Below, piece after piece: positions 19,455 through 51,995 of a stretch of 64,000 nt of DNA (its first letter is position 1; every line of letters begins with the position of its first letter). Location: positions 323,669 to 387,668 of the forward strand of contig NIVC01000572.1 of NCBI GenBank assembly GCA_002269645.1. The letters run 5' to 3'. The notes beneath the pieces were generated by a model. It was given only the letters and a program-made list of their open reading frames with translations. It was not told the DNA's origin and did no database searches. A program made the translations under genes and the position numbers. This stretch comes from Macrostomum lignano. Its lineage: Eukaryota.

Positions 19455-19549
<95 letters not shown>

Positions 19550-25721: not shown

Positions 25722-27026
25722 TTAGTGTTCCTCGTTAGCATTTTGACTCAACAGCAGCATAGTGTTGTACATCTCGCTAAAACAGCTGCTCAAGTCGCTG
25801 TCAGTAGTTGCAGATATCTCGCAGCCATATTGAAGCACTAGCAGCAAAATGCTCCTAGTATGGGAACAAGTGCTCAAAGTAAGCTCGATGCTAACAGCTT
25901 CCTTGAGGTGAGCCAATGCATCCTGTGTGAATTCGCCGGCCAAATTAACGGTTGCAGCACCCAGAAAAGTAAAAGCAGATGCGGTTAAAGGGCTGCCGGG
26001 AAAGTGTTCCTTTAAAGCAAACGCGCTTTTACTTAGAAAGACGCTGGCTTTCTCTAAACTCTTCATCAATTCTTCAGTAGAAACAGTTTGATTCAACGGC
26101 TGCTTCTTCAATCTAGCTGTCAGAGGACAGGTCTCTTCATACTCGCTGACTCCTTCGATGTAGTCAGAAAATGCAATGAAATAAATCTTGGAACGTTCGC
26201 TAATAAGGTCTGAGCAGTCGATGAGCTTGCGCGCTACAGCAATCAGTGCACGACTCTTTCGAGTCTGACGCAGTTCAACAAAGCAGGAGGCCATTCGTAG
26301 AATAACGACAATCGACTGGGTGCTTGGCACAATGTCCGAATCGCTGCGCCGAACCAATTTGTTATTACGCGTTCTACGCTCCAACGAGAAGTCTAGAAAC
26401 TGTGGCGCTTTCTCAAAAAATCTACGCCCGCCAACATCTTTTTGAGTAGCGCAGTTCAACATTAGCCTGGAGACGGACTCGCACATGAGGCCAGTCAGCT
26501 CCGGGGCCAGGGCTGGCCAAGAGTCGCCTAGGCGCAGCAGATATTTAGCAAGCCGGTAGGCACCCTCCGTCAGCCAAAGCCAAGCGAAGCTGCCCCGATG
26601 CGAGTCGCTGCACAAGGCCAGATGGGCCTCGTTAACTAAGAACAGAACGCTAGCGAATGCCATTCCTATTCTTTGTTCACCCTCTTCATCAATAAACTGA
26701 TTAGCCAATTGTCTGAAAGCAGCAATACGATCCAATTTGTCTACGGATTTGACAGATGACCAGAGTAGTTCTTCAGCTTGTTGGCCAATGAGTGCCAGAA
26801 ATTCGTTCTGCAGTTCGCAGGCGCTAGCCAGGTCGCTGCTGCAACGACGCCTGAGCTGCTCGTTTGCCAGAATGACCAGTGAGCAAGCTCTGGCAAACGG
26901 AGCCGCGTCACCACATGTAAATTTAAATGCGTTGTTTCTGGCTGTCCAAAACTCTGTATGATCCTGCTCGGGTACAAACCGCAACCAGGTACCCACTCGG
27001 ATGATGGGCTCTTGACCAGAGCTCAT
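25722..27026 (-). CDS. Array paralog P4: single TPR-like module only (434 aa), truncated copy
   Basis: Homologous to the first exons of P1-P3 (LFLVNEAHLAL, LVRRSDSDI, ELRQTRK, ETCPL, PLTASAFTFLG). It reads through to a stop where the other copies have a GT donor. Confidence 0.8.
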   Translation of the reverse strand: MSSGQEPIIRVGTWLRFVPEQDHTEFWTARNNAFKFTCGDAAPFARACSLVILANEQLRRRCSSDLASACELQNEFLALIGQQAEELLWSSVKSVDKLDRIAAFRQLANQFIDEEGEQRIGMAFASVLFLVNEAHLALCSDSHRGSFAWLWLTEGAYRLAKYLLRLGDSWPALAPELTGLMCESVSRLMLNCATQKDVGGRRFFEKAPQFLDFSLERRTRNNKLVRRSDSDIVPSTQSIVVILRMASCFVELRQTRKSRALIAVARKLIDCSDLISERSKIYFIAFSDYIEGVSEYEETCPLTARLKKQPLNQTVSTEELMKSLEKASVFLSKSAFALKEHFPGSPLTASAFTFLGAATVNLAGEFTQDALAHLKEAVSIELTLSTCSHTRSILLLVLQYGCEISATTDSDLSSCFSEMYNTMLLLSQNANEEH

Positions 27027-28437
27027 AGTTTCCGAGGCCTTAGTGACCGGCCTGCTGAAATTAATAGGGAGTTCGGCACAAGATCGACAAACAACCCATA
27101 TACAAAAGCTGCAGATCTTTTCTTCAACTGCATATCAAATCATTAGAAGCTGTCCGTATTTATCTTTTATAGTTCTATTTCTAAAACTTCTGAAACCCTA
27201 GATGTGGCTATTAGAAAAAATTGTTGAATTTCTCCTCGGCATTTCCCCACGGCAGCTTATTGAACTTTATTCAAATCTATATGATCACTCAGTCACGTCG
27301 GCAGCTAAGCGAAAATTAAAAATCAACCCTTTTAACGACGTGGAAGTGTTAACAAAGTACTTAATACTATTCAGTAGTTTATTCGGAAGATTCTTAAAAT
27401 AGTGAAAACAAAAAGACGGTTTTTTGCAAGGAAGATTTGTTTAGAATAAAAATATGGATATAACGACATATGACGAACATCCAAAAGGAAAAAAAACAAT
27501 AGTAGATTTTTGATTAGAATTGTAAATACAAAACTACATACAGCATGCTAATAAACTATATGTAAATACCAGATTCAGAAGGACCTCTAGGGTCCTTGAA
27601 CTAATTCATTTGAAGGTGCCGATCTATTCCAACAAAGCTGCCATGGGGACAAGCTGAAAATTATCGACACGGATCCGTGTTAATAAAATTGGAATTATCG
27701 ACACGCAGTGGGGATAAGCACTTCCCGCGTTTCAGGAAACGCGTTGACTTGAATCCTCAACAGGAAAGTTACAGTACGCTTGTATAGCTATTTGATATAA
27801 ATATGCATACAGGCGGGCATAAAATATTAAATATTAAAACAAAATGGTGATAAATCTAATCATGTTGGAATCATGAAGCATTTTTCAGAAAGTTAGGTGC
27901 AATAAAACGCGAGCTTGATGCAGCAAAGCTGACTTTTTAGGTTGATGCTTCGCATAAAAATGATGATCCACTAAGCCCTTCCTTAGGGCGCATAAATCCA
28001 TCATTATTTCATTTCGAGGTCATGCACTAAAGTACTGCACCGCTAAGGATCTTTTTGATATACAACCCTTTCTGTAACTCTATGAGTCACCATAGGCCAA
28101 ATAAGGAAGCACCAATTCTTGTTAAAAAAATACACATACACTGTACATGCATATATGTTTTTGGTCAAATAAAAAATGAGATTTTCCGATTTCCATTGAC
28201 TCCAAACTTTTTGAATTTCAGCCATGTGTTAAAATCGATAGACGAAAGAATCGTAGAGAAGATGCGAGCTTGAAAAATGGCCTGAACCATTGAAAGTAAG
28301 CCAGGCGTGTTTTATAGGCAACTTTTACATGCTGCTATTTTTTACAAGAACAGTTTTAGATAGCACACAAGCAGAAAAAAAGCAAATACGCTCAATATTT
28401 TTTCCGATAGATTGTTACTGAAAACGATGAATTATTA

Positions 28438-31400
28438 TCAACACTCTGTGTCTCTACCGTAACTGGCATCAATGAGTTGAGCCGGTTCGCACATCTGCAA
28501 CAGCTGCTCGTGATTAATTTGCAGTCTGCGAAGTATTTTCTGCTTGTCACGCGGCGCAGCCAGCGTGTACTCATTCAAACCATTGAGAAAGTCGTTCCGC
28601 CTAGGGATATTGTTAGACGTTCGCGTCATGCGACACTTTGGCACGCAGAGGTAGATCCATTCGCTATCGCAGACATTCTCGTGCGCGTTCCATAGCTTCA
28701 TCAGGTAGTGCGAGTAGCACATTATTTCAGTGTAGGTTGGCAGGTTATCTTCAGGATAAACTCGACCAAACATAGCCTCGCAGGTTTCTCTGAGATGCTG
28801 TTTGCCCTCCCAATCGATAATGGGATCTGGGAAGATGTAAGTAAACAGTAGAAGTAAAAGATGTAGGAGCGCATATTAATTTTAGCCAATGCCTTTCAAA
28901 AATATTCCAGAAACGCACCAACTAATCGCTCAGCAACGAACCGGTCGCCAAGTCGAATTTCCGTCCATATAGCGTCATCGCCTAGCAGCAGACTTCTTGT
29001 CTCTACAGAGCAATCTCTACTCATTTCTAAGATTGCCTGAAATCGGCACATTTGGGTTAAGAGAAACACTGAGCGTTCACGGCGCATCTGATGCTGTACA
29101 TCGAAACTGTGGGGTTACAATTCTCACTCTGTTCCTACTGCAGCTCAGAGCTTCTACCCTATAACAGCGGGTGAACTCAAGCTAGGCCTATTTTGCCCCT
29201 CGCTTACTGCGGCTACCTTAAAGGGTGATCGACATAAGCCACTTCATATGAATACTAACCAGGGCCAACTCCGCTTAACCTGCAGCACTGGCGGTGAATG
29301 CCCTAACAAAATTGGCTAGAGATCTTCGATTAATAAACCTATCAAAACAAATAGACAGCTTGACATCTTGAACTCACGTCAGCAGCAGTCACTATGCCAG
29401 ACCACTCGCTCTGGCGATCCGACGTTGCAAAGTACACAGCCAGCTTCCTCGCTACATCAATAGATCGCCAAGCCCAACAACTGGTTGCGCATCCGTTAGC
29501 AATCAGGTTGCGCTGGATTTTTAGGCAGGCCCTCAAGCAATTCAGCGCTTTCTCTTCCTGGTCCTCCAGCTGCATCATATTATAGTACATCACAGCTAGC
29601 AAAGCGTAGCAATCCCCAGTTAGAGGATGCAGCGGTTCCAACAGCTCCAAGACCCTTGACGCCCGACGAAGTTTAAGCACAGCGGCATTATACTGTGAAT
29701 AAGCCGTTTTTGTGAGATCTTTGACCGCGCTTTTGTAAAGAATGACTGCAGTGGATAAGTGTACACAGGCGTGCAACGGCGTATCTAGAAGTCCGGTAGA
29801 GGTGCACGAATCATAAGCTTCTTGGAACGGCGCCAGTCTACGCTTCGGCTTAGGCATGGGGAGAAGTTCTACATTCACATAATCCTGATTCAAATCCAAC
29901 ACTGTTGTACTGTTATCCGATGAGTTCATGAATTCATTGGTTGCACCGAGTGCATCGTCCAATATTGCGATTCTGTGTTCGACAAGAGCAAACACAGGGT
30001 CCGATAAATCATTGTCAGATTTTGGAAGCCAAGATTGTAGCGATTGACTCAAAGATTTGGCAGAACGCTTTATCTGCCCGCTGCGTAGCATCCTTTTTGG
30101 CAACAGTTCGTTGAGATCGACGCAAACCTCGGCGAGACTGCTGTCGAGTACCGCACCCAGGTGGAACCAGGCCGCGCTCGCCTCGAAAGCTCCGCGCAGC
30201 TCGTTGCTTAACTTTCTACTGTTATTCATCAGGCACCTGGCCGATCGCCAATTGTCAGACCAGAAACGCAGCAGGACTGAGTCGGTGAAAGAGTACCAGT
30301 TTTCCCTGATGTACCTACCAGTCTTTGGAGAGTTCACTGAGTAACCAACAGGTGAAGATCTATTCAGACGCCAATTTTTTCCCAACTGTAAGTCCAAAAG
30401 CACAAATTTTGCCTCATTTGCTTGCCAGAAAGCGCAGCAAACGGCTACGGCTTCTGCCATTTCTGCTACTTCGCCACGCTGTAATTTCCTGCGCAACTGA
30501 GATAGCTTGAAGCTGCTTTGTCTACTGATGTGCAAAGAGAATTTCTGCGAAAGAAGCTCTTGAACAGCATTTTGCTCCACGCCAGCAAGATCTATTGCAC
30601 ACCGAATCAGGTGGAACCTGGCAATAAATAGTCGACATAATATTGCAGCTAGAGCTGAGTCAGTTGCGATGCACTCTCGCAATCTTCGCCTAAAATAATC
30701 TAAACAGTCTTGTCTATAACAGTCGGTGAATCGGAGGTCAACAAGAGGAAGAGAAGGATTTTGGTGCTCAGCTGTCTCAGCTGCCTCCAGAGGTAGCAAA
30801 GATACAGTTGACGAAGAGCTCAGTCGATTCAGCTCAAAATCGACGTCAGACACACCTGCTATTGGATGCTCTTCTTTGGTCGCACTAAGGTCGTTATGAT
30901 GCAGAGATTTCTAAAGAAAAAAATTCGGCTAATCATTAGAATATTCCCATTTAACACTTTAACCGTAGATAATATTGAATGAGATACTAAGACTTACCAC
31001 GGAGCTGTGCAGCTCTTTCCATCGGAGTGCAATAGCGCTCTCATCGTTCTCAAACAATCCTGCAGCGACGCTAATTGTTTGCAACAAATAGCGCATCGTG
31101 TTACTCCTTTGCGATAGAGCCATCTCTACCTGAACTGCCTCTTGTAGATACGCGAGAGAAGTATCATTAAACTCCGCCGTTCTATTAGCTGTCACAATTC
31201 CAAGCATTGTAAGCGTTGACGCAAAAATAGTACTTTTAGAAAAGCTCTGTCTCAGCCGGTACGCGCTGCGAGTCAGCTTTTCCAAAGCGCTGTCGTATAG
31301 CTCTCTTAGCTCTCGGGCGTTTAAAATAACCGACCCAGCGTTCAGCTTGCTGTGCAAAGGACTTGTACGCTCGAAGTCATTGACACCATCAAAATAGTCA

Positions 31401-32239
31401 ATAAAAGCACTCAAGTAGTGCTTGGAAAGCTCGTCTAGAATTGTTGATTTGCCTAGCAGCAAACGGGCTTGACAAATCAGCGCAGTGCACTTATCCATCT
31501 GACGAAGCTCCAAAAAGCACGTGGCCATGCTAACAATAGCTACCATCGACTGCTCGTTCAACACAATTTCAGCATCGATTCTGCGAGTGAGACCTTTTCT
31601 AACCCGTCTCTCAATTGCAGCCTGAAAATGCGAGAAAGACTTCAACAAGTACTTGTGCGCGTAGACGTCTTTGACGCTGGCGCAGTTGAGCAGCAAGCTG
31701 CCAACGCTGAATCGAACGCACGCAGTCATTTCTGGTCCGATTTCTTTGCTTTGAAGGCAAATCTTGCCGAGTCTCTGGGCGCTTTCAACCAGCCAGAACC
31801 AGGCCCACGATCCCAGCTTCTTCGGATCGCGTAGGGCCATCTGACCTTCGTTTGCTATGAAAACGACAGTAACGAAATATAAAACTGATTTTTCTTCGTT
31901 AAAATTAAAATTTGCTAAATATTTGTTGAGTCGATCTGAGTACTTCTCGCTATCGCTGCAGGTAATGTAGCTCCAAAGATCTTTAATAGCATTTCGTCCC
32001 AATAAGTTCATAAACTTTTGTTGAATAGTTTTAGCGTCGCTGAGATTTTGCATTAGAAGGTAATGAAGGCCAAGCATCACGTGACATACAGCTTTCGGCA
32101 GAACTTGATGAGATCGATCCGAATTTTTCGGTTCTGAAGCTTCGACAAGCCTAAGACGCTCTCGCCAGTACTGAAGAGCTTCTTCCCGAGGCACGACCTG
32201 AAGCCAAATTCGCATTTCAACCGGCTCCTGATTCTGCAT
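28438..32239 (-). CDS. Array paralog P3: double TPR-like module plus conserved C-terminal domain, 1093 aa; exons 30998-32239, 29378-30910, 28919-29036, 28438-28826
   Basis: Junctions gtg|gtaagt..tttag|aaa, gac|gtgagt..ttcag|gca and g|gtgcgt..cccag|at (phases 0,0,1). Sum 3282 nt, open. TPR_12-like HPLTGDCYALLAVMYY...KALNCLRACLKIQ. Confidence 0.85.
29246..29300 (-). other. 5S rRNA-derived fragment (SINE3-like head) in an intron of P3
   Basis: Minus strand gttaagcggagttggccctggttagtattcatatg resembles the 5S internal control region gctaagcagggtcgggcctggttagtacttggatg. Confidence 0.5.
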
Positions 32240-33499: not shown

Positions 33500-36400
33500 T
33501 TAAAAATTCGCAAATTTGTAGTGAAAGCGTTTAGCAAACTTGCATTCATTTAACAGCAGATTGTGATTCTGTTGTAGTCGGGTGAAAATTTTGTTTTTTT
33601 CCTTGACGCTTTGGCGTGAGTACTCGGAAATACCCAGCAAAAAGTGGTTTCGCACCACGTCAAGTTTTTCCAGCGGACAATCTCGATTGTCACCGTTGTG
33701 GCACAGCTCCCAGTGCTGACTAAACAGCTTGTTGAGGTAAGTAGCGTAGACTCTGATCTCGCCATCGCTTGGTAGACAGTCCTCTGGAAACTGGCGATCC
33801 CTAAACAGATTTGTGAGGCCTTTCATGCTGACAGTTCGCTTTTCTTCCCAGTCTACCAACGCATCTGTAACGTTGATTGATGTTTTTTTATAAACGAGGA
33901 AATCTTATTTGTCAATATAGCTAGATGGAATTAAAAATCCTAATTAAAAATCCATTCAATAATGAGAAAGTGTGTTCTAAACTGTGTTTTTACATTCAGG
34001 TAAACCAAGTCTCAAATACCAAATGGCTACACGTGCAAATTTACACTCACCTGATAGAGTTTCAGCCAACATAGTCTCGGAATTCGATGCATCGTCAATA
34101 TCGACTGGCATTTGACACATCAAAGTCTTTCGACCAAGAAGGGCCTGCCGAAGACAAATATGATTAAATGTACCGCGTCCAGAATATTTTTTAAAGATTG
34201 CATGCATAATAGTGAAAAACTTACAAACAATTTATCGAATATACTTTGCCATTCGCGTTCAATCAGCGCATCCTCATCATTCGTGTTTTGCCGCAACATA
34301 CGAAACTGCTCTCTGCAAATTCGAGCCACATCTAAACACTTCCATAGCCAGGGACTGGGCGATGCTTCCTTGACGATGAGATTGCTCTCAATCCTGGCAC
34401 ACTTTCTGAGACACTGAAGGCATCTAGATTCTTGCTCGTCAATCTGCATCTGACTGGAGTAGAGAACGCTTAAAACAGTGTAACAGTACGTCACTTTGAC
34501 ATCATCGCCGCAGATAAGCTCGAGAATTCTAGCAGCTTTCCTAAACTTTAAAATTGCAGCACTGAAACTGTCGTAATGAGGCTTAAACGGATTAACTTCC
34601 CCATAGCGTAATAGCTGAAGACCCGCTTGCATGTGCACCAAAGCGTGGGCCACTGTATCCATTAGACCTCTTTTTTGGCACAGGACGTAAGCCTCATCCA
34701 GTTGTTTCAGCTTGTCGGACGCCTGCGACGTGTCTATTATAAAGTCGAAAGTCTCTAGGATGCCAGTTGACTCTAAAAGGCTAGAGACGAGACCACCGTG
34801 AAGCCTGCGATTACGCCTCCCAGCTGATTGGTTCAGTAGACGATTCAACAATGCGGGAAAGTTCACGCACACAGAGTTTAAGTAACTCAATAAAGTCTCA
34901 ATTCCTGGGCCATTGTGACTTTTTTCTAAACGTTTTAATCGGTTTAGGTCTTGTAGCAAGTCAACTGTGGTTGTAATGAGTTTTTTATCGGTCTTGTAGC
35001 GATCATCGAATGCTACGACGTCATTTAGTCGGTAGAAGCCTTCTGCTAAATAATTTTCCAAGAAAATAAGAGCAGGAATTTCGTCAGATTTCCAGCTATT
35101 TCGGATCGCGTTGAACAAATCCTGACCGCGCCTGAAACATTCTTGAGCTCTTTTCCAATCGTTGCTTTTCTTGTTACTCAGCCGAAAACTATACAAAGCC
35201 CAAGAAACAAGCTGCGAAGCGAATGACTCATCGCCATCGTCCCAACGTTGCCGCACCTCTGCGGCGGACTTTTGCTGATAATATTCGAGCGCATTACCAA
35301 GAGCCAGCATGCCTTCATTGACAGTCCAGAATGCGACTACAAAGATCAATTCTCTGCAATGGCGTGGAAAAGATTCAGACATAGCTTTAAATGAAAAGCT
35401 TCCATTGGTTTCTAGCTTCAGACCAAATGCAAGAGAGATCAGGCGTGAGACTTTAGCTTGTCGGCATTCAGCTTTTCTCAAGAAATACGAGCGTAAATTA
35501 TGTCTTGAGAGAAATAGAAGGAAAACCAATCTGTGTAATATTTGGCTACGGTCCAGAATATTGTTTAATTCCTTCTTCCAGTAAGCTAAGCTTCCTTCGC
35601 GATATCCATCGGTGAACTCTCTTGCTTTGGCAACTACATTAAAGACACTATCGCTTTGACTGGACGCTTCAACATCGGTAGGAACGTCGACTTGAGATCG
35701 AATTGTTTCTGGTTCTCTTGTAGTAACGATCTAGAATTAGAATGTGATACTTACATTAGCTCTTACTGAAGTACCGGTATGCTATAAGTGAAAAAATTAA
35801 ATTTAAATCATTACCAAGAATAAAAATTATCAATGCTTACGGTAAAGTACAACTCTCGACACTTGTCTCGAGCAGCCTGCGTAGTTGCCAGCGTGGTACC
35901 TTGCTGCAAAATCTGGATCATATTTGCAGCCATAATAGTGTTGGTTTCGAATTTAGACTCTAGCGAAACAGCCTTCTCTAAATAATACAAACCGCCTTCA
36001 TGCTCCATTGTAAAGTCGGCTGCTTCGTTCACGCAAACAATGCCCATCAATGTGTACGCAGAAGCGGTAAGCCCAAGTTCGGAGATTTCTTCCGTTAAAT
36101 TTTTCAAACACTCGCGCAGGTGTTTCTTTGCACTTCTATATGCTTTCATAAGCTTTTCGCGGTCAAGTAAACGAGAACCCGCATTAAGTTTACTGGCTAG
36201 AGGACAAGTTTCCTCAAAATCAATTAGTCCGTTCAAGTACATGGCATAGGCAGTAAAGTAAGTCTTGCAAACGATTTCAGTATCTGCTGGTAACTTGTTG
36301 AGTTTAAGAGCCTGATCGATCAACTTTCGAGCCTTCGTAGTCTGACGAAGTTCAATAAAAATGGCCGCCAACTTTAGAATTCCTTCGATAGATTCATCGA

Positions 36401-37412
36401 CAACTCTAATATCCGAATCTAGCTTGCGAACTATTCTTGAATGTTTTCTAGGCTTCCAATTAATCATGGCTTCAAAACAAAGGAATGCTTTAGATAGATA
36501 CCAATGTTCAAAGGTACCCTGCTGCATTCCACAGCTAAAAAGAATGCTTCCAGTGGCGTGTCTGGATAGGTCGACAAAAACTTTGGACTCTTTGGGCGCT
36601 CTTCGAATATAATCAGTACACAGCCAGAAAAGAAACTTTGTTTTCTCTCTTAGTCTATGCGCTCGGACACTGGTCCGGTTAAAGAGCATTAAACGGCATT
36701 CGCCCACTATATAATGTAAAGTGATGAACTGAAGTGTGCAAGAATGCTCATGGGTCCACTCAAATGTCAGTTGACTCGACGCAGCCTTTGACTCTCCGCT
36801 TTTGTTGCTAGACTTAGGCTTGAAACATTCTTTTATAAGCTCTTCATACTTGTCTGCATATCTATTAGCCATAAGAAACTTTGCGCTAGCTTTCACACTG
36901 ATTCGCCGGTTTGTATTGTTTTCTTTGCTTTCAGTAACGATGCCTTCATGTTGCGAAAGTTGAGACGTTATAGCACCATTTCCTTCTCTATTGTCTTTAG
37001 GAAGCTTTGAAAAAGCTCGGGTATTATTTCCCTTATTCATACTGCCCTCGTCGATTACACCACCGCTGCATTCAGGGTCCGAATTCGGAGAGGCGGCGTG
37101 GTTAAGCGTGTCTGCAGCTTGTTTGCCAATTAAATTTTTGAACAAATTGAGGAATCTTTGACCTTCCGTTGCTTGATTCCTAAATAGATATTCGTTTCCC
37201 AAAAATACAAAGATAAAAGCCTTTGCAAAAAACCCAAATGTCTTTTCAGCATCTTCGTTCTTACATTCATCGACTCCAAGTAGTCCATCTCTTGTTTTCA
37301 GTTCATTGTAACGAGACTTTAAAAAGTCAAAATATTCCTCATTCGGGAAGAAGTTTAACAAGGGTGTCGGATTAGGCGGCTGTGGAAGAATCTCTAAGAC
37401 CGTCGCGTCCAT
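33500..37412 (-). CDS. Array paralog P2, 1178 aa; exons 35841-37412, 34225-35730, 34051-34144, 33500-33864
   Basis: Junctions acc|gtaagc..tctag|atc, ttt|gtaagt..ggcag|gcc and g|gtgagt..tacag|at (phases 0,0,1). Sum 3537 nt, open. Confidence 0.85.
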
Positions 37413-38127
37413 TCCAAATTAGCTTGGAACGAGCAAGACTTTACTCGCATCGAGCAGGCACCAGAGACCAGAGTCAACCCGCGCTTCTTCGGCGAGGGGC
37501 TTGTAAATTATTTATACAACACCGATTTAAAACTGAAAATTGAATTACAACAGGCTCGTTAGATTGAATACAAATATTTTAAACTTTTTTCCTACCTGTA
37601 TGGCACAGGATATTTATTACTATAAAAATCAAGCGGAATTTAAAAAGTATTATATATCCTATATACTAAAAATGAGTTGTCTGTGGGTAGGTAGGTAGGT
37701 AGGTATGCGATAGATTTCAGAAAAAATGGCTCAACAGATTTTCTTCAAACTTGCACCATTCGATCAGAAATTTTCCTGGGACGGTACATGCATCTTGGCT
37801 AAGAAATTGCTCAATGTTAAAGGGATTAAATATTCGAAAAACGTGCTTTTTTGCAAAGGTCAAGCAGCTCTTTCGACCTGAAATGCGTTGTAAGAATGCT
37901 AGAGAAAAAACTGACTGACTGAATTCCAATTGTGATAAGGATTGCATCACAACCAGTTGAAAACAGTGCCGAAGAAATGCACACAAAACTTGATTTAAAT
38001 TGCGTAACCACATTGCTAACTTAAATTGAGACTGATACTGGCTGACTGAGAAATTGATTATGTCATAAATTTTAACTCTAACCGATTTGCAATAAGAATT
38101 TAATTATAAGGGCCACAATTCAAGACA

Positions 38128-38195
38128 AGAGATAGCATAGATGCGAACAGACTGGACTGCTAATGCTGCGACCTGGGTTCGAATCTTAGTAGTGC
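38128..38195 (+). pseudogene. tRNA-like sequence (Ser-GCT-like anticodon loop), likely a SINE head or pseudogene
   Basis: A-box-like tagcatagatg, ct-gct-aa loop and B-box ggttcgaatc; no acceptor stem that pairs well. Confidence 0.45.
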
Positions 38196-38254
38196 AAAAA
38201 GATTTTTTTATTCAAAAATCTTAAAAACACAAAATGCTAAACACAAAAAAGCAC

Positions 38255-41200: not shown

Positions 41201-41690
41201 TGTCTAACATTTAAGAGCCATCATGTCAAACATTAAAGAGCTACTTTGTCTAACATTAAAGAGCCACCATGTCAAACATTAAAGAGCCACCATGTCAAAC
41301 ATTAAAGAGCCACCATGTCAAACATAAAAGAGCCAACTTTTTGAACATTAAAGAGCCACCATGTCAAACATAATAGAGCCACCATGTCAAACATAATAGA
41401 GCCACCATGTCAAACATTAAAAAGCCACTTTGTAAAACATAGAAGAGCTCCCATGTCAAACATAGAAGAGCCCCCATGTCAAACATAGAAGAGCCCCCAT
41501 GTCAAACATAGAAGAGCCACCATGTCAGACATTGAAAAGCCACCGTATCAAACATAAAAGAGTTACCATGTACGAGCGTAGAACAAAAAAGAGCCACAAT
41601 GTATAACATAAAAGAGCCACAATGTAGAACATAAAAGAGCCACCCTGTTAAACATAAAAGATACACAATTTCAAACGTAAAAGTAAGCGA
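38255..41690. repeat. 3.4-kb satellite of 23-bp monomers (catgtcaaacattaaagagccac / catgtcaaacatatacatgactc) with higher-order duplications
   Basis: Period 23. Variant blocks recur at offsets 805 (35x23; 38705 vs 39510) and 644 (28x23; 39211 vs 39855). Confidence 0.95.
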
Positions 41691-41759
41691 ATTTTAAAGG
41701 AGCCGCTATAATGCTAAGGAAATTGTCGCACTAGCTACTTATTGTCTGGTGGATGCTTA

Positions 41760-42212
41760 CTATTTGGGGATGCTATCTATCTTGGGGATGCTTGCTATCT
41801 TGGGGATGCTTGCTATCTGGGGGATGCTTGCTATCTGGGGATGCTTGCTATCTGGGGATGCTTGCTATCTGGGGGATGCTTGCTATCTGAGGGATGCTTG
41901 CTATCTGGGGGATGCTTGCTATCTGGGGGATGCTTGCTATCTGAGGGATGCTTGCTATCTGGGGGATGCTTGCTCTCTGGGGGATGCTTGCTATCCGGGG
42001 GATGCTTGCTATCTGGGGGATGCTTGAAATCTGGGGATGCTTGCTATCTGAGGGATGCTTGCTATCTGGGGGATGCTTGCTATCTGGGGGACGCTTGCTA
42101 TCTGGGGGATGCTTGCTATCTTGGGGATGCCTGCTATCTGGGGATGCTTGCTATCTTGGGGATGCTTGCTATCTGGGGGATGCTTGCTATCTGGGGGATG
42201 CTTGCGGTCTTG
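41760..42212. repeat. 17-18-bp minisatellite (ggggatgcttgctatct)
   Basis: Direct reading. Confidence 0.95.
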
Positions 42213-42373
42213 GGATGATTTCTTTTTGCAATGCACTTCATTTGAGCAGTTTGTCTGTTGTCTTTTTGAAGGATTTTTGGCTGTTTTTTTGTTACTTGTA
42301 GAGAACAGAGATTCTATCCAGATATATAATATATAAAAATATTACTGAATTAGTACTTAACCAAGGTGCTAAA

Positions 42374-42602
42374 GCTACGCTAAGGCTACGCTAACGCTAC
42401 GCTAAGGCTACGCTAACGCTACGCTAACGCTACGCTAACGCTACGCTAACGCTACGCTAACGCTACGCTAACGCTACGCTAACGCTACGCTAACGCTACG
42501 CTAACGCTACGCTAACGCTACGCTAACGCTACGCTAACGCTACGCTAACGCTACGCTTACGCTACGCTAACGCTATGCTAACGCTACACAAACGCTACGC
42601 TC
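42374..42602. repeat. 11-bp tandem repeat (acgctaacgct)n
   Basis: Direct reading. Confidence 0.95.
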
Positions 42603-43672: not shown

Positions 43673-46600
43673 CTAGTAGGTAACATCATAATTTTCATGA
43701 AATTTGCGCGCTTTCGGGCAAAGCGTCACCAACGAATTGTGAACCTGCTGCAGCTGCTTGATGATGCTGATCTTAACTGTTGCAGTGCTCTCAGAATAGA
43801 TGTTCATGCCTCGAAGAAAGTCATTTCGCTTTACTAGGTTATTTCTCGAGAGATTGTCTAAAGTGCATGGATCTTCCCGTGTCTCCTGTTTGCTTTGTTC
43901 AGCTGTTCCAGTACTGCCCTGTTTGTGCCTTGCCATACGGCAACTGACCAAGTGACGGTCGAACAGCTTCATCAGATATCGAGCGTAGCATCGAACTTCA
44001 GTGTCAGAGGGCGGACTATCTTCGGGAAACTCTCGATCCCACATCATCACAGCGATAGCTTTGAGGCTCCGATTTCGCTTCTCCTCCCATTCGGTTAATG
44101 GATCTAGTAAAAAAACGAATACGTTGGTAAATTTACTTGCACATTCGTAAAATATAGCAACAGGTTAAAAAAGCACTATACTTGGGATATGTATACTCAG
44201 TTAGTCAATTTTGAGTAGTTTTAACAATACAACATTTTCATTGCATTCTCTCTACTTAAAATTGGAAGGTACAAGTAACCTAGCGTCATTAATCATTGTA
44301 TCTATAAGGAAAAGCGATGAAATAAAGACCAGCGCTTTCGATGGAAAATCTAAAAATACGAAAGGCTCAGACCAAGTTTTAACACAGGGCCCATACATAA
44401 ATTATACATACTAAAAAGCATGGGTTTGCTCACTAGCAAGCAAAGTAAATATAATTTTCAAGCACAACAAAGGTGAAAAAACCTACCAGTCAGTGCTTCA
44501 GTGAGAAGGTTTGAAGCACCCAAAGGAGAGGAACCAAAGTCTTGCAAGTAAAATAACGGCCTGTCTTTGTACAACGCAGTCTAAAATAGCGTAAAATCAG
44601 CAAATTAACTGAATGCACAAATGCGTGATTAAATAGCATGTAAAATATTACAGCACACATGAATTTAGTCCACAATTAATGTGAAAAAATAAGTAAAACA
44701 CATTTTTAGTATATGAAGAAGATATCTACGAACCTTAAACTTTTGACTCAACTCATTCCATGACTCGAGATCTACAGAGAATGAAGCACCATCGCGGTAG
44801 TTATTGGAAACTCGGTTTAGAAATTTTTGAAAGAACTGCACAATCTCTAAGCCTTTCCAAAGCCAAGGACTGGGTGATACGCCTTTCACTACCAAGCGCT
44901 TTTCCACGCTTAAACACTTCTTAAGACAGAGAAGGCACTGCGTCTGTTGATCGTCTAGCTGAGCGTGATATCGATACATATAGGCAAGAATTAAGTAGCA
45001 AAAAGCTGTTTTCACGTCGTTCGGACACAGTAGCTCGAGTATTCTGGCAGCCTGCCGAAACTTAAGAATGGCGCCACTTAAAGTGCCGTAGGGTGATTTA
45101 GTTGGGTCTCTAAATGCTTGAATAAATAGTTCAATACCCACGTGCATGTGAATGAGAGCATAGAGCTCCGTATCAACCAGCTCCGCTCTTTGACACAAAT
45201 CATACGCTTGTTGAAGAATTTTCAGCTTGCCAACGTAATGCGCAACGGTTAAAACAACATCTAAATTGCATTTATCAGCGGGCTTTTCTTCAGTCTTATT
45301 AAACTCATAAGGTAGCACTTCCAGCAGATCCAAAAGTCCATGGAAATTAACCTGAGCTTTATGCAAGCATAACATCAAGTCCGTAGCGGTCGAATCGACA
45401 GTACCAATGCTTCGCCCGACGTCTTTTGAATGCTTATCGACGTCTTTCAGCAACAAAGTCACAGAATGAATAAGTTTATAATTAATTTCGTAAATACTGT
45501 CCACGGAGAACATTCTATCCAGCTGGTAATAAGCGTTGGATAAATGTTCTTCTAGAAACACGAAAGCAATCCAATCAAGACCTTGTATGCTGGTTTCGTT
45601 TTTCTGGACAATTTCACTAACCAGATTTAAGGACTCGAAAGCCTCGAGCCAGGAGTTTTTCTGCGAAGCCAAGAAGCTCGTTACAACAGAACAAGCTCCT
45701 AAAAGATACGAAACAATCATTTTTCCGATCTGTTCTGACCATGAGTCCCTAAAGTCAGTTTTAACAAATGACGAAGCGTTCTTCTTCTGATGCTCCTCTG
45801 AGGCTTGCAGAATAAAAATAATGCCTTCGTTCACCAACCAAAGTGCAACTAGGAAGACCAACATTTTGTGATCTTTGGGGAACCTCAACTCGAAGTCCTC
45901 ATATGTAATTCTGGCTAAACGACAGACATCCAGCTTTATACCGAATCCAATATCCAGTAGGTGTGCAGTAGGGGGCGACCCAGTCCCGGGCCCGGGCCCG
46001 AAAAGTCGGGAATCCCGACCAAAATCGTGGCCCGACCCGGGCCCGGGCCCGACCCTAAAAAAGTCGGGAAATCGGGACAAGTCTTTTTTCCCTAAAGGCA
46101 CTAACCGCGTGCGAAAGAATAAAATTATTTTTCAACATATTCACACTAATTTACGTTTAATTCCAGCCCCAGGAAAATGCAACTGCAACTGCAACTGTCT
46201 GTGACCGTGAGTGTCAGCCACAGCAGTTTCCACTTTCCAGGAAGATCGGATTTTTTCCAGGAAGATAAAATTAAAACAGTTTTGCAATACTTTTTTGCAA
46301 TATTGATTCCACTTTACACGCTGCAGGCTGCAGCCTAAAAGCAAAAATATGATTCTTTAAAAAGTTGATTTGTCATTTTTAAGCTTTTGTAAATAACATT
46401 TCCTATTTACATTCCAAGAAGTACCTATTAAGGGCCAAGGCAACCATTTTTCCAAGAAGTTTGCTATCTATCAGTATCAGAGTTTGTAATCGTGTTCATA
46501 TTTGTATCGTATTCGTAGGTAGTCGTAGTCGTAGACTCATAGTATCGTATTCGTAATCATATTCGTTTAGGTGGGTAGGTGAGCAGGTAGGCAGGTATCA

Positions 46601-49349
46601 GCTAATTACTTGTATTTCCATTGTCTGTTTGCCTGTTCTGTTGAGACAGTTGAGTGTTGTGTTGTGTTGTCACTTCATTTGTGTTCTGCTCTGTTGTCTT
46701 GTCTTGTTGTCTTACTGAATACTGACTGTGTACATGGCTCTTTACATTGAAGCTATGTAAAGGAACTAAAAATTCAAATAAAAGAATCAATCAATTGATT
46801 TGGTTCTTACTTCCTTACTGCTTCCAATGCCAAGTGCCTTACACTTAATGCTTCAGCTTTTCTTCTTTTTGATTACTGCCACTGCCAGTGCCAGCCGCAC
46901 TGCCGCAGTGCCTGCTTGCCTACCTCACTGCCTGTTAGTGTCATTGTCACTGGCACACACACAGTACTTGTGCCACACAGGGACATTGAATTTGAACTAT
47001 TGAGTATATTGATATTTGAGTATTAAGTCTTTTAATGTAACTCTTATCTATTCTGAAGTCGTAACTAATGTATTAAATAATAATAATATTTATTATATTT
47101 ATATATTATTATATATTTAATGTATTTATATATTATAATATATTTGATGTTTATCATATATTTATTATACATTTAATATATTATATTAAATTTAAAAATT
47201 CATATATTTATTATATATTTAATAGTAATCCGCATATGCTAAAAGTATTAAGATTTATTATGATTTTTTTCCAATTATTGAGCTGTCCTAAAGATCTTGT
47301 CCCGAATTCCCGAGGCCCGACCCGGGCCCGAGTCCTCATTCCCGGGCCCGACCCGGGCCCGACTTTGGCCGTCCCGGTCGCCCCCTAGTGTGCAGCCTTC
47401 TCTTGTTGATGTTTTGCAGAAGACAAAGCTTGAGTATTCAAATAATGGCGAGTAATGCAGAGAATGCAAAACACCCTGACCGGAATGTCTTCGATGTCCT
47501 CATACTTGCGTACTAACTTCTTTAAATATGCAAGCGATTCTAGTCGGTAGCCATCCAAAAAGTCTTTCGAGTCTTTGATCGTACGTATTATAGTCATCCA
47601 TGCTGAGCCATCGCTTGAATCAACAGAAGACTCGAGATTGCTTTTCGGTACCATATCAGCTTGGAGATTTGAAGCGCTGCGCACATTGGAGCTCTCATCA
47701 GCAGGCTGTGTTCGTACGCTCTTCTCTAAAAATCTTCTTTTGATGGCTGAATTCTGAAGAATTTAAAGGAAAATGAAGTAGCATGTTACTAAGCAGGTGA
47801 ATAAACATGAAGTAATGAAAATAACTATTAAAAGGTATGCAAAACTTACAGCTCTGTTGTACAACTCCTTGCATTTTGCAGAGCTAGTCGAGTCAGAACG
47901 CAAATTAGCACCAACGTGAAGAAACTGCAACAAATATGTTGCCGTCACTGTTCCCGACTCCAATGCACACTCCAAATGTACAGCTTTCTCAAAGTTCTGA
48001 AGAGCCTCTTCCGAAAACGCACCAGCACTATTGACGAGAACTACAGACAGCATTGTGACAGCTGAAGCAGTGAGAGGATCACTTGCGTAGTTACTTCTCA
48101 AAACAGACGCGCTTTTCTCTAAGCATGACTTAGATAATTCGTACTTCTTTTTCAAAAAATCTCGATTAAGAGCTTTACTGCTGCAATCAAGACCACTCTT
48201 CAACGGGCATGTGTCCTCAAAGTGGCTTACTCCTTCGACATAGTTGGCGTAAGCTGTGAAGTAGGAGACAAAATCAACGCTTTTGTCTTGCAAGCGATTC
48301 AGAAGCTGCTTTCCTAGCTTAACCAGCGCCATACACTTTTGCGGCAGACGCAACTCTAACAAACAAGCAGCCATGTTCAGAATGGAAGTGATGGACCACC
48401 CATTAGGAATAATGTCTGAATCGATTCGTCGAATCAAGCTGGCCTTCTGAGGTCGCCGCTCGATTGCCCCGTCGGAATATTGGAATGCCTTTACGAGGAA
48501 CTTGTGCTCGTAAATTGTCTTCCTTTTAGCACAGTTAAACATCAGTCTGCTCATGGTTAACCTCAAAGAGTTTGCAAGACAAGGGTCGACTGCGACTGCC
48601 TTCTGACTGAAGTACTGAGTCGCCAACCAATGGGCAAATTGACAATAAGACAACCAATCTGGTTTTTCAGAAGTATCATCGTTCCAGAGTGCGATGTAGC
48701 ATTTACCTGCAACGTAATGCGCAGTGACAAATGTTATTGCGCTCTTGAAGCCCTGTTTATCATTGGCTTCCTCTGTTTCCGATTGTCTCTTTTGTCTTTC
48801 TTGCTGTTGATCAGTGGTTTTTGCCATGCTTGATTGATTGTTCTTTGGTTGTATGTCGCTTTCGCTCTTTGTCTCGGTTTTTTGCTTTCTTTGCTCATAT
48901 TCAAAGTGCTCAGAAGAAATTTTATCAAGGAACTCACTGTACTGAGAGATCATAACCAATTTATGTTCGCTGGGTGTTTTTAGTTTTCGCTTATTAGCGG
49001 GTTGATCCACACTCTCTTGATTTTCGCCGTGTTTTTCTTTCTCTACTGCTCCAGACTTTGCTTCGTGACCACTGTTTTCCATCGCTGAGTAGAGTAATTT
49101 AAACGCGTCACCCAATAAACTCTCAAACTCTTTCAAAAAGCGCTCTGTTTGAGCATTATTTTGCCGAACTTGATACTCATTTATCAGCATTACAGTGGAA
49201 AGAGATTTCTCGAGGAGTCCAGCATCTTTTGAATGATGAACGCGATTATACCTGTCTTTCCAGTACTGCAAGTTGAACGTATTCGCAAAATACTGAAGAA
49301 ACGCAGCCTCTCCATCTTTAATCAATCCTTGATTTAGTTCAGAAGCCAT
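43673..49349 (-). CDS. Array paralog P1, 1205 aa if the insertion is removed; exons 47850-49349, 47388-47753 + 44734-45960 (split by a hAT element), 44487-44580, 43673-44103
   Basis: Junctions gct|gtaagt..ttcag|aat, aag|gttcgt..tttag|act and g|gtaggt..actag|at (phases 0,0,1). Excising 45969-47387 and one TSD restores QQEKAAH-LLDIGFG in frame. Sum 3618 nt. Confidence 0.8.
45969..47387. mobile_element. 1419-bp non-autonomous hAT element inserted in exon 2 of P1
   Basis: TSD GTGTGCAG at 45961-45968 and 47388-47395; perfect 12-bp TIR TAGGGGGCGACC; subterminal CCCGGGCCCG repeats at both ends; AT-rich non-coding interior. Confidence 0.92.
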
Positions 49350-51612
49350 CAGCTTTGAAATAAGCTATGAAACCCCAAGTCGCCGATATAATTCTTGATC
49401 ACGAATTGAACGTCACGAATTAAACGTGAACCCAGTCAGAGACTGGTTTCAGAAATTTTTAAATGGAAGTTTCATCGATAAACAAAATCTGAAAGGAATA
49501 TAAAGAATAAGCCAGCTGTATGAAACATAATAAGCATCAAGCAGTATCATAGCCAGTAATCAAGTAATTTCCCGTTGCCTATCAAAAAACGCTAGGTATT
49601 TCATTTGTAGTGCATCGTTATTCATAAAATGCTACTGTAAGTAGACTAATGCAAACATGCGCAGCAAAACTTAGTGTGAATCAGGTTACTATTTGTAACG
49701 AAACTATGAAGCATGTTACTAATTATAATGGGAAGCTGTATCGTGTTACTATTTATAATGAAAAGAGGAATCATGTTACTATCTACAGTATATTGAAAAG
49801 AGTAAGCCCTTGTTGGAGTCTTTATAATTTTACTATTGAGAGCCTTGTTATTGCTGGCAGTTACTGTTCAGTTGATTTTAGAGTTATTGAATTGGAGACT
49901 CCCTATTCCTAAGGGATTGGATAAAATCTACGGACCGATTCCGATACTCTTAGAGGATTATTGATTTGATTCATTTTGGTACCCTAGAGTAACCGATAGG
50001 AGCACACGATTCCGATTCCGCTATTTCTAGAAGACGACGCCCTTTCTGGAGGACCTCGTCATTGTTATAGAGTTAAATTTGTCATTAGGGCCCATCTCTG
50101 ATATCTGCACTCGAGAAATATATCGAAGTCGACGGGTTAAATTGTTATGTTCATTAAAGTGCTCTCATATTCAGCCGACTTCAGGATTCAAGAAGACTAC
50201 TCCGGATCGGAGGAAGACTACAAGCTCTACAGACCCGCCCAACAAAGAAGAGGAGCCTGCACCAGTAAGTGCTCACTGAATTTTGTTCTCATGCTTGAAG
50301 TCTGGAAGTGGGAGTTCGTGCGTTTAGACACTAGACCTAATTCTCTCTCTATTTTCTCTCTCTCTATCTCCCTAGCCCTCTCTCTCTAGTGTGCTAAAGC
50401 GAACTCTTTACATACTAGGAAATAGCGCACAGAATATCCTTCGGCAAAAAACCTAAAATATACTATTGAAAAGTATCAATAAAATTATAGTGTGCAGGAA
50501 CTCTAACTGTGTGGGCAAGATTTTGGGACCCGATAGAATTGCGACCAAGGGATTTCGGAAGACGCTCCTTGCTAAGTTAAAAAACTACAAAAAACAAACA
50601 ATTTTTGAGAAGAGTTATGCCAGATATCAACTTTATTCGACGTTATTACAATTGTTATAGAATTAAAAACAAAAAAATGCTACATTACTGACTTTGGCAT
50701 TTACACTTCTAACTGTTCAAAATGATAAAAGTAAAAAAATCTGCAAAGCCTTAAAATCTTATTCATCATTGCTATCTAGGATTCGAGAAATTCCCGCAGT
50801 TCTAGTTTAAGAAAATCGTTATAGTACAATAGCTAAAATTACATGAATATAGTTAGCCTAAGCGTGTTGAAACGGTGAAACGCACGGAAGCCCGCCCGCT
50901 GAAATTTTCTATGGCTGACTTCAATAAATATAACAACTCGTACACATATTGGATGAAAATAGCCTGTATTTGGTTAATGTTATACCACCTAAAGCTGTTC
51001 GACTTTAAGAATATTCAATTCTCTGCGAAATGCTTATTTATCAGTTACTGTTTTTTCGATTCGCAAAATAAGGAGTTTTGACCATAGACAATTTCTTAGA
51101 TTTCATTTTTTTCGTTTTCCAGAGTGCTCATGTGCAAATTGTGTGCAAAGGCTAAGCTCCCCTATGACCCCGCTGTCTTCTGACTGCCATAGACATTTTC
51201 AGCGGGCCGTGAAACCGACTGAATGCATTGGAATAAATGGGATTTTACCATAGACAGTCTCAGCGGGCTGTGAAACGCGGTTTTTTGTTTATATTGGTAA
51301 ATTGTTGCCTTACAAAAGTATGCTTCCGCTAAATATAACTACGCATAGGAACATCAAAGACAAGTAATAAGAAATAAGGAGAAAAATCAAACCATACTGT
51401 AAAAACACCGCATAAAAGGGTAAATTGTTTAAAAGTAAAGTCAGATTATATTGCACACGAATCACGATGTTGGTACATAAAAAGACAAAAGAAAATAAAA
51501 TAAAATGTTTCAGCGATTTTTTTCTTTGTGACTAAAGGCATTCAGACGAAATCAAATAAGTATGTCACACAAAAATGAAGCCAAAAATCAGATAGAATGA
51601 ATGCAGAGTTTC

Positions 51613-51995
51613 TTAATAACCAACTTCATGATTTTCGTGGTAGTCCCTCGCTGCTGGGCAGTTTGACAACAATAAATTATGAACTTCTTGCAGCCGATTA
51701 AGAATTTTAATCTTCTCCTGTGCGTTGCTCTGAGAGTAAATATTAAGGCCTTGAAGAAAGTCGTTTCGCCTAACCTCTCCGCTCTGTCCAAACGAATTTG
51801 GAATTTGGCATTTACCGTATTTAGAGAAAAAGCAACTGTCGGAGTGACTGTTGAATAACTTCGTCAAGTATTGGGCGTAACAGCGGATCTCTGTGTCAGA
51901 TGGCGGACTGGCGATAGGAAATTCACGATCCCGCATTATCACTGCGATTGCTTTCAGGTTGCGAGATCGTTTCTCCTCCCAATCGGTGAGTGGAT
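51613..51995 (-). CDS. Orphan last exon (C-terminal domain) of array paralog P0
   Basis: Acceptor gcacag|at (phase 1), then DPLTDWEEKRSRNLKAIAV...RRNDFLQG...YHENHEVGY*. Clearly homologous to the last exons of P1-P3; upstream exons not found. Confidence 0.75.

What the first reader, a model, noticed from the sequence alone, without database searches (positions are those of the whole stretch)
25722..51995. Tandem array of highly diverged ~1100-1200 aa TPR-like proteins with an unassigned conserved C-terminal domain (candidate novel gene family/system)
Seen: eleven minus-strand ORFs of 111-533 aa, plus the split 5' part of P1 exon 2, resolve into repeats of one 4-exon gene. I verified canonical GT/AG junctions and identical phases (0,0,1) in P1, P2 and P3 (1205, 1178, 1093 aa); the small third exon is 94, 94 and 118 nt. 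The paralogs keep full open frames despite deep amino-acid divergence and large indels. Introns are only ~85-380 nt and minisatellite-free, unlike the neighbouring genes. Birth-and-death signs are present: TE-disrupted P1, truncated P4 and orphan P0. Established: TPR/alpha-solenoid repeats are ligand-binding scaffolds, and clustered, fast-diverging, birth-and-death families are typical of immune or recognition genes. Inference: a lineage-specific sensor (variable solenoids) plus effector (conserved tail) family; I recognise no named family.
Basis: partly seen in the sequence, partly recalled or inferred. Interest (0 to 1): 0.88.

Follow-up and report, generated by a model that had tools for sequence, protein, structure and literature searches.

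The report
Flatworm-only tandem TPR-like gene family

Summary
On the minus strand of 25.7-53.4 kb lie three full four-exon genes: P1 (1205 aa), P2 (1178 aa) and P3 (1093 aa). All introns are GT..AG, the phases are 0,0,1, and exon 3 is 94, 94 and 118 nt. There is also an exon-1-only relic (P4) and the 3' end of a further gene (P0).

The DNA is from Macrostomum lignano. GenBank proteins built from an RNA-seq-guided annotation use the same splice junctions.

New here:
- The exon-1 and exon-2 modules are homologous to each other, so the protein is a two-module TPR-like solenoid plus a roughly 130-aa helical bundle with invariant His and Cys residues.
- A profile search of 1.84 billion proteins finds only M. 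lignano paralogues.
- The tail domain has no sequence or fold match.
- Two genomic copies differ by a transposon insertion, a frameshift and a nonsense codon. Even so, dN/dS is 0.18-0.37, which indicates purifying rather than diversifying selection.
- The tail is only slightly better conserved than the solenoids (38% versus 27-30% identity).

Verdict: a species- or genus-restricted, uncharacterised TPR-like family evolving by tandem duplication and gene loss. It is most likely a protein-binding scaffold. The sensor-plus-effector immune reading is unsupported. Interest is moderate to low.

The parts
43673..49349 (-). P1: four-exon gene of 1205 aa once the transposon is removed. Exons are 49349-47850, 47753-47388 + 45960-44734, 44580-44487 and 44103-43673. 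Exon 2 is interrupted by a transposon in this copy.
   Evidence: The junctions are identical to those in GenBank proteins P0002 and P0009.
45969..47387 (.). 1419-bp non-autonomous DNA transposon inside P1 exon 2. It has 12-bp perfect terminal inverted repeats (TAGGGGGCGACC), GC-rich subterminal inverted repeats and an 8-bp target-site duplication (CTGCACAC at 45961-45968 and 47388-47395). These features are hAT-like. It is absent from the collinear contig of GCA_002269645.1.
33500..37412 (-). P2: intact four-exon gene of 1178 aa. Exons are 37412-35841, 35730-34225, 34144-34051 and 33864-33500.
   Evidence: Residues 296-1178 match the GenBank protein BOX15_Mlig034560g1 (P0001) across all three junctions.
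28438..32239 (-). P3: intact four-exon gene of 1093 aa. Exons are 32239-30998, 30910-29378, 29036-28919 and 28826-28438.
   Evidence: The junctions match P0003, P0005 and P0006. dN/dS against the second copy is 0.37.
25722..27026 (-). P4: single-module relic of 434 aa, homologous to exon 1 only. The former splice donor is lost and a stop follows 11 codons later. No exons 2-4 lie downstream. The ORF is kept in both genomic copies (8 nonsynonymous against 13 synonymous differences).
   Evidence: No P4-type protein is annotated in any database searched.
51613..53433 (-). P0: the 3' end of a further paralogue. Exon 3 is 53433-53340 (94 nt, with intact TTTTAG acceptor and GTAAGT donor). Exon 4 is 51995-51613. 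Exons 1-2 were not found in 53.4-64 kb.
43676..44101 (-). C-terminal domain, shown for P1. The equivalent regions are P2 33503-33862, P3 28441-28824 and P0 51616-51995. It is a helical bundle of roughly 130 aa. Invariant residues are P26, P31, E35, Y39, Y42, L43, H50, C54, C79, F95, L96, G98, Y102, L117, Q118, H121 and C128.
37651..42325 (.). Insertion of about 4.7 kb in the P1-P2 spacer. It carries 46-bp (x74), 18-bp and 11-bp tandem arrays and is absent from the collinear contig L001. It is not part of the genes but explains the one long spacer.

Best explanation
The region is part of a tandem array of a gene family known so far only from Macrostomum lignano.

Shown:
- Each gene encodes an all-alpha protein of about 1100-1200 aa.
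- The protein has two homologous TPR-like solenoid modules of about 450-500 aa, one per large exon, so it arose by an ancient internal duplication.
- After the modules come a short, poorly conserved linker (exon 3) and a C-terminal helical bundle of about 130 aa (exon 4).

Inferred:
- The protein is probably intracellular. This rests only on reading the N-termini, which show no obvious signal peptide or membrane segment; no prediction tool was run.
- The two solenoids most likely act as protein- or peptide-binding scaffolds.
- The variable N-terminal part of each module and the disordered inserts probably set partner specificity.
- The C-terminal bundle probably binds a metal such as zinc through invariant His and Cys residues (H-x3-C ... 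C ... H-x6-C). It would then serve as a constant docking or oligomerisation module.

The family evolves by tandem duplication, segmental gene conversion between neighbours, and loss. It does so in a recently polyploid genome that holds two or three copies of the whole array. Individual copies carry disabling lesions while the family as a whole stays under purifying selection.

Species and transcript support:
- P0001 is 100% identical over 883 aa and is named M. lignano.
- The GenBank annotation derives from a genome-guided RNA-seq transcriptome (PMC5730564).
- Annotated proteins share all my junctions.

Domain architecture:
- hhalign of the exon-1 module against the exon-2 module gives probability 92%, E 5.7e-7 over 335 columns.
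- The AlphaFold model is all-helical. Residues 220-530 have pLDDT 70-89.
- Foldseek returns CTR9, IFT-A, KLC1, LGN, OGT, Rap and IFIT5 TPR solenoids.
- TPR_12 scores above its cut-off in paralogue P0011.

C-terminal domain:
- The model has pLDDT 74 and pTM 0.67, and 17 residues are invariant, including 2 His and 3 Cys.

Taxonomic restriction:
- Eight hits, all M. lignano, among 1.84 billion representatives.

Selection and turnover:
- Purifying selection is seen between copies.
- Lesions differ between copies: a transposon here, and a 7-bp frameshift plus a GGA-to-TGA change in the other contig.
- P1 and P1' show mosaic identity of 17-42%, then 77-100%, then 22-55% along their length.
- Consecutive GenBank accessions PAA83347-PAA83350 suggest that four further family members sit side by side on another contig.
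Against: - No experiment or expression data bear on function.
- The scaffold role is inferred from the fold class only.
- The window's own P1-P3 do not reach any Pfam TPR threshold.
- Foldseek TM-scores are low and the full-length model is poor: mean pLDDT is 55, and residues 671-871 are below 45.
- Loss-of-function alleles in two of three genes on the other contig could mean the family is decaying.
- 'Only in M. lignano' may reflect the absence of other Macrostomum proteomes from the databases.
Confidence: 0.6

Rival explanations
1. This is the first reader's idea: an innate-immune or conflict-type receptor family. Variable TPR solenoids would sense ligands and the conserved C-terminal domain would be an effector, for example a HEPN-like RNase.
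For: - The layout is a tandem array with deep divergence, indels, gene conversion and presence/absence of disabled alleles.
- The module is IFIT-sized, and IFIT5 is among the Foldseek hits at E 0.025.
- The C-domain is a helical bundle. A HEPN toxin (8yuf_A) is its fourth Foldseek hit. An R-x4-H motif, RLQxxH, sits in the long helix preceding the short C-terminal one in 4 of 6 paralogues, and the His is invariant.
Against: - The HEPN hit is not significant (E 1.9, probability 0.23).
- The Arg is replaced by Gln in P1 and by Met in P0012.
- No Pfam or PADLOC HEPN hit, or any other effector hit, was found.
- No NACHT, NB-ARC, death-fold or TIR domain is present.
- dN/dS between copies is 0.18-0.69 in every segment.
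- The tail is barely more conserved than the solenoids.
Confidence: 0.12
2. The genes are a rapidly evolving reproduction-related family (testis, ovary or prostate), like many taxonomically restricted Macrostomum genes.
For: Published work reports that reproduction-related genes in Macrostomum evolve fast and often lack homologues (PMC7336406 and PMC8662610, seen). This family is taxonomically restricted and fast-diverging.
Against: - None of the six family gene ids searched was found in the supplementary lists held for PMC7336406. Those files were truncated when stored, so this is weak evidence.
- By eye the N-termini show no signal peptide, so a secreted seminal-fluid role is unlikely.
Confidence: 0.13
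3. The array is largely a decaying set of redundant copies with little present function. It would be tolerated because the neopolyploid genome carries several copies.
For: - There is a transposon in P1 here.
- The other contig has a frameshift in P1 and a nonsense codon in P2.
- P4 is truncated and P0 lacks its 5' exons within the window.
- P3 and P4 are not called as genes on contig L001.
Against: - Each lesion is private to one copy, and the other copy is intact at that site.
- ORFs of 1093-1205 aa are otherwise free of stops.
- dN/dS is below 0.4, with synonymous divergence about equal to intron divergence.
- Transcript-based annotations exist for P1, P2, P3 and three further types.
Confidence: 0.1

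Closest known systems
TPR / TPR-like alpha-solenoid scaffold proteins (Pfam clan TPR, for example the KLC1 and LGN/Pins TPR domains, CTR9, and IFT-A TTC21/IFT139)
   Same: - The repeats are all-alpha helical hairpins.
- One canonical TPR_12 match lies in the conserved part of module 1 of paralogue P0011.
- Foldseek's best PDB matches are all of this class.
   Different: - There is no sequence homology to any of them: the profile search of PDB found nothing.
- The window's own proteins fall below all Pfam TPR cut-offs.
- The two-module architecture with a unique C-terminal bundle is not that of any named TPR protein.
IFIT proteins (interferon-induced proteins with tetratricopeptide repeats)
   Same: - Both are clustered, tandemly duplicated, fast-diverging TPR-only proteins. 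The IFIT side of this comparison is from my own knowledge, not tested here.
- Each module here is about the size I recall for an IFIT (about 450-500 aa).
- IFIT5 appears among the fold hits (rank 48, E 0.025).
   Different: - The fold hit is no better than for any other TPR protein.
- There is no sequence similarity.
- Each protein here has two modules plus an extra domain.
- There is no evidence of RNA binding or of induction.
HEPN-domain proteins (Rx4-6H RNases found in conflict systems)
   Same: - The C-domain is a small up-down helical bundle.
- An RLQxxH motif in its last long helix is present in 4 of 6 paralogues.
- A HEPN toxin is among the top, non-significant, fold hits.
   Different: - The Arg is not conserved.
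- The fold match has E 1.9.
- No HMM match was found.
- The invariant His may instead be a metal ligand, together with three invariant Cys.
Automatic UniProt names given to fragments of the P3 orthologue: 'CHAT domain-containing protein' (A0A1I8GMU4) and 'Cohesin loading complex subunit SCC4 homolog' (A0A1I8G597)
   Same: Both names point to TPR-rich families (TTC28-like and MAU2), in line with a TPR-like fold.
   Different: Scanning these very sequences against Pfam gives no CHAT, MAU2 or any other significant hit. The names are not supported.

Membership tests
TPR repeat superfamily (Pfam clan CL0020) | Match to a TPR Pfam model at or above its gathering score | tested here: inconclusive
   The window's P1-P3 reach at best 16.6 bits (TPR_14) against a cut-off of 23.5. 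Paralogue P0011 scores 31.4 bits on TPR_12 against a cut-off of 30.1, in the homologous conserved block.
TPR repeat superfamily (Pfam clan CL0020) | Solenoid of antiparallel helical hairpins of about 34-40 residues, structurally superposable on solved TPR domains | tested here: met
   The AlphaFold model has about 13 helices in residues 221-529 at pLDDT 70-89. Foldseek hits to KLC1, LGN, OGT and Rap TPR domains have probability 0.97-1.00, E 5e-3 to 2e-2 and TM (target) 0.24-0.51. The match is weak but consistent.
HEPN RNase superfamily | Conserved Rx4-6H catalytic motif | tested here: not met
   RLQxxH is present in P2, P3, P0 and P0011. P1 has QLQQVH and P0012 has MLQENH. Only the His is invariant.
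HEPN RNase superfamily | Significant sequence or fold match to a HEPN family | tested here: not met
   Pfam and PADLOC gave no hit at E up to 10. The Foldseek hit 8yuf_A has E 1.9 and probability 0.23.
STAND/NLR-type immune receptors (NACHT or NB-ARC plus repeats) | A central P-loop NTPase domain | tested here: not met
   No NACHT, NB-ARC or AAA hit in any of 13 family proteins. The only related item is a chance-level NCH2 hit at E 0.07-0.1.
CHAT-domain / TTC28-like proteins | A caspase-like CHAT domain (PF12770) | tested here: not met
   No CHAT hit in P0005 or in any paralogue.
IFIT family | Sequence homology to IFIT proteins, and an RNA 5'-end binding pocket | tested here: not met
   No IFIT appears among the HMMER hits in PDB or in the 1.84-billion-protein library. 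The fold hit to IFIT5 is generic. RNA binding cannot be tested with these tools.
hAT-superfamily non-autonomous transposon (the insert in P1) | 8-bp target-site duplication and short terminal inverted repeats | tested here: met
   The 8-bp duplication is CTGCACAC and the 12-bp perfect terminal repeats are as listed. It has no transposase ORF. Superfamily assignment from duplication length alone is provisional.

The most novel reading that the evidence does not exclude
The family is a flatworm-invented intracellular surveillance system. Paired, diversifying TPR solenoids would recognise foreign or selfish-element molecules. The invariant His/Cys helical bundle, a fold with no PDB relative, would be a new effector or signalling module, possibly a degenerate HEPN-like RNase or a zinc-dependent oligomerisation switch.
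Probability: 0.1. Interest if true: 0.65.

Novelty: new member of a known kind. Interest (0 to 1): 0.3.

Why it matters
If the family has a defined role, it would show how a taxonomically restricted, multi-copy scaffold family is born, duplicated internally and in tandem, homogenised by gene conversion and pruned in a recently polyploid animal genome.

The C-terminal bundle could also define a new domain family.

As it stands, this is one of many unannotated lineage-specific families in M. lignano. Its main practical value is a corrected set of gene models: full-length P1, P2 and P3, where GenBank has N-terminally truncated or chimeric models.

Tried and rejected
- **Pfam.** Scans of all exons and of 10 database paralogues gave nothing beyond weak TPR hits.
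- **PDB sequence searches.** Profiles of the full length and of the C-domain gave zero hits.
- **PADLOC and permissive Pfam on the C-domain.** Nothing relevant.
- **Word-indexed protein search.** Three runs with P2, the 8-sequence alignment and the C-domain alignment returned only P0001 or nothing. This tool also failed to return known family members that are in its collection, so its negatives are weak. The exhaustive HMMER search is the informative one.
- **Expression evidence.** The ids of six of the annotated family genes were not in any searchable paper text. They were also absent from the held supplements of three M. lignano RNA-seq papers, and a fourth paper had no held supplements. The orthogroup table that could have shown other Macrostomum species is truncated in storage.
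- **Upstream regions of P1-P4.** They share no detectable similarity, so there is no evidence of a conserved promoter block.
- **The 52-64 kb region.** It has no long direct or inverted repeats, so I could not show that a single transposon separates P0 from its missing exons.
- **The 578-aa ORF at 58505-60241.** No Pfam or PDB match.
- **RNA genes.** No tRNA or Rfam hit in the window.
- **Rejected: a housekeeping single-copy family.** There are no homologues outside the species.
- **Rejected: a transposon- or virus-encoded array.** Intron positions and phases are conserved, there are no terminal repeats, and the genes are spaced 1.3-2.3 kb apart.


Full report
**1. What is in the sequence**

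I rebuilt the genes from splice-site context.

| Gene | Exons (minus strand) | Product |
|---|---|---|
| P1 | 49349-47850, 47753-47388 + 45960-44734, 44580-44487, 44103-43673 | 1205 aa |
| P2 | 37412-35841, 35730-34225, 34144-34051, 33864-33500 | 1178 aa |
| P3 | 32239-30998, 30910-29378, 29036-28919, 28826-28438 | 1093 aa |

- Every intron is GT..AG and 80-383 nt long.
- Phases are 0,0,1 in all three genes.
- Exon 3 is 94, 94 and 118 nt.

tblastn of the three proteins against the window finds every module of every copy at E 1e-12 to 1e-67 and 26-38% identity. It finds nothing outside 25.7-53.4 kb.

**2. Lesions and fragments**

*P1.* Exon 2 is split by a 1419-bp element at 45969-47387.
- It has perfect 12-bp terminal inverted repeats (2 matches in the window against 0.08 expected).
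- It has GC-rich subterminal inverted repeats.
- It has an 8-bp target-site duplication, CTGCACAC.
- Deleting the element and one copy of the duplication restores the reading frame.

*P4 (27026-25722).* It matches exon 1 only. The donor site is gone and a stop follows 11 codons after the old junction. Unrelated sequence lies downstream.

Besides exon 4 (51995-51613), a 94-nt exon 3 with intact TTTTAG acceptor and GTAAGT donor sits at 53433-53340. P0 is therefore the 3' end of a further gene. Its exons 1-2 are not present in the remaining 10.5 kb of the window.

**3. Origin and transcript support**

P2 is 100% identical over 883 aa to GenBank BOX15_Mlig034560g1 of Macrostomum lignano. That protein's contig (NIVC01001597.1, locus L001) is collinear with window 24.6-52.6 kb at 93-99.8% identity.

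The GenBank annotation of that assembly was made from a genome-guided RNA-seq transcriptome using StringTie/TACO plus a de novo assembly (PMC5730564). The annotated proteins carry the same exon junctions that I derived:
- P0001 for P2.
- P0002 and P0009 for P1.
- P0003, P0005 and P0006 for P3.

The junctions therefore have indirect transcript support. The database models are N-terminally truncated or chimeric. The window gives cleaner full-length models.

**4. Family size and range**

A HMMER profile of P1-P3 was scored against 1.84 billion representative proteins. It gave eight hits, all below 1e-30 and all from M. lignano.

They add three more paralogue types:
- P1' (P0004 and P0010).
- A 1094-aa type (P0011).
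- A 1083-aa type (P0012).

Four of these proteins have consecutive accessions (PAA83347-PAA83350) on one 616-kb contig. I infer that the array continues upstream of P1 with at least three more genes, and that P0 is probably the tail of the P1' gene.

No P4-type protein is annotated anywhere. Other Macrostomum species are not represented in these protein libraries. 'M. lignano only' therefore means 'absent from all other sampled phyla and flatworm orders', not 'species-specific'.

**5. Protein anatomy**

*Two homologous modules.* Profile-profile comparison shows that the exon-1 module and the exon-2 module are homologous: probability 92%, E 5.7e-7, 335 aligned columns. Neither resembles the exon-4 domain. 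The protein is thus two tandem modules, a linker and a tail.

*Full-length model.* The AlphaFold model of P2, built on an 8-sequence alignment, is entirely helical.
- Confidence is good only for residues 220-530 (pLDDT 70-89).
- It is moderate for residues 880-1000 and for the tail.
- Mean pLDDT is 55.

*Fold matches.* Foldseek against the PDB returns only TPR-type solenoids: CTR9, IFT-A, KLC1, LGN, OGT, Rap and IFIT5. E-values are 1e-5 to 3e-2 and TM-scores are low.

*Sequence support.* One paralogue passes Pfam's TPR_12 threshold in the conserved block of module 1. The window's own proteins do not reach any TPR cut-off. 'TPR-like' is therefore a fair description.

*C-terminal domain.* Modelled alone it gives pLDDT 74 and pTM 0.67, as a bundle of four main helices plus two short ones. 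It has no significant PDB neighbour; the best E is 1.5. It has no Pfam, PADLOC or PDB sequence match.

Seventeen positions are invariant across six paralogues that share 25-60% identity. They include H50, C54, C79, H121 and C128. I read this pattern as a probable structural metal site. That is an inference and was not tested.

An R-x4-H motif reminiscent of HEPN RNases is present in only four of six copies.

**6. Evolutionary signals**

Mean pairwise identity among five full-length paralogues:

| Region | Mean identity |
|---|---|
| Module 1 | 30% |
| Module 2 | 27% |
| Exon 3 linker | 18% |
| C-terminal tail | 38% |

The 3' half of each module is as conserved as the tail. The 'variable sensor, constant effector' picture is therefore overstated.

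Between the window and L001:
- P3 has dS 0.070 and dN 0.026, a ratio of 0.37.
- Segment values range from 0.19 (linker plus tail) to 0.69.
- Intron divergence is about 0.047, similar to dS.
- P4 has a ratio of 0.18, from 8 nonsynonymous and 13 synonymous changes.
- P1 and P2 differ too little to test.

This is purifying selection of moderate strength.

The two copies nonetheless carry different disabling lesions:
- The transposon in P1 is here only. In L001 the flanks abut with a single copy of the target-site duplication.
- L001 has a 7-bp insertion in P1 exon 1.
- L001 has a GGA-to-TGA change at P2 codon 295. This explains why the GenBank protein starts at the next Met.

P1 and P1' show mosaic identity: 17-42% over residues 1-200, 77-100% over 200-680, and 22-55% over 680-880. 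This indicates gene conversion or segment-specific divergence.

M. lignano is a recent polyploid with three subgenomes and a highly redundant assembly (PMC5730564; PMC10733133). That makes copy-specific decay unsurprising.

**7. Interpretation**

The structural and evolutionary description is well supported. Function is inferred.

I favour an intracellular protein-binding scaffold or adaptor with a metal-stabilised constant tail (confidence about 0.6 for the whole statement).

The immune sensor-effector idea remains possible but has no positive evidence. I place it at about 0.1. A reproduction-related role and a mostly decaying array are at a similar level.

**8. Novelty**

The sequences are already public as hypothetical proteins, and the fold class is known. 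What is new:
- The recognition of the family and its array.
- The two-module architecture.
- The unmatched C-terminal domain.
- The allele-specific lesions.

Taxonomically restricted families are common in this genome, so a specialist would be only mildly interested without functional data.

Noticed in passing
window 37651-42325: An insertion of about 4.7 kb, relative to the GCA_002269645.1 contig, lies in the P1-P2 spacer. It contains a 46-bp minisatellite (about 74 copies, 38252-41683), an 18-bp array (41745-42205) and an 11-bp array (42368-42601). A short stretch near 38150-38185 looks tRNA-like to the eye, but ARAGORN and Rfam report nothing.
   Followed up: partly
window 7374-7739 and 9554-9979 (+): Two tandem cyclophilin-type peptidyl-prolyl isomerase exons (Pfam Pro_isomerase, E 1e-36 and 4e-40). 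They are surrounded by several minisatellite arrays of 16-88-bp units between 6.2 and 17.6 kb.
   Followed up: partly
window 58505-60241 (+): A 578-aa ORF with no Pfam or PDB match. From memory, its Cys/His-rich motifs and an 'FPFENYLG' motif resemble transposase-associated domains of CACTA/KDZ-type elements. It lies in the GC-richer 53.5-64 kb block, where P0's missing exons would be expected.
   Followed up: partly
L001 3227-4733 and 9116-10687 (the other assembly's copies of P1 and P2): The published contig carries a 7-bp insertion (CGAGCCC) in P1 exon 1 and a nonsense codon at P2 codon 295. The GenBank models are accordingly truncated (P0001, P0002) or chimeric. P0009 joins a P1'-type exon 1 from further upstream to P1 exons 2-4.
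   Followed up: yes
window 19117-19904: A long, imperfect CT-rich microsatellite of about 790 bp, with a strong GC- and AT-skew switch between 16-18 kb and 18-20 kb.
   Followed up: no
window 11734-13637 (+): Two ORFs of 251 and 176 aa. They may be exons of one gene. Neither has a Pfam hit at E 0.01.
   Followed up: partly
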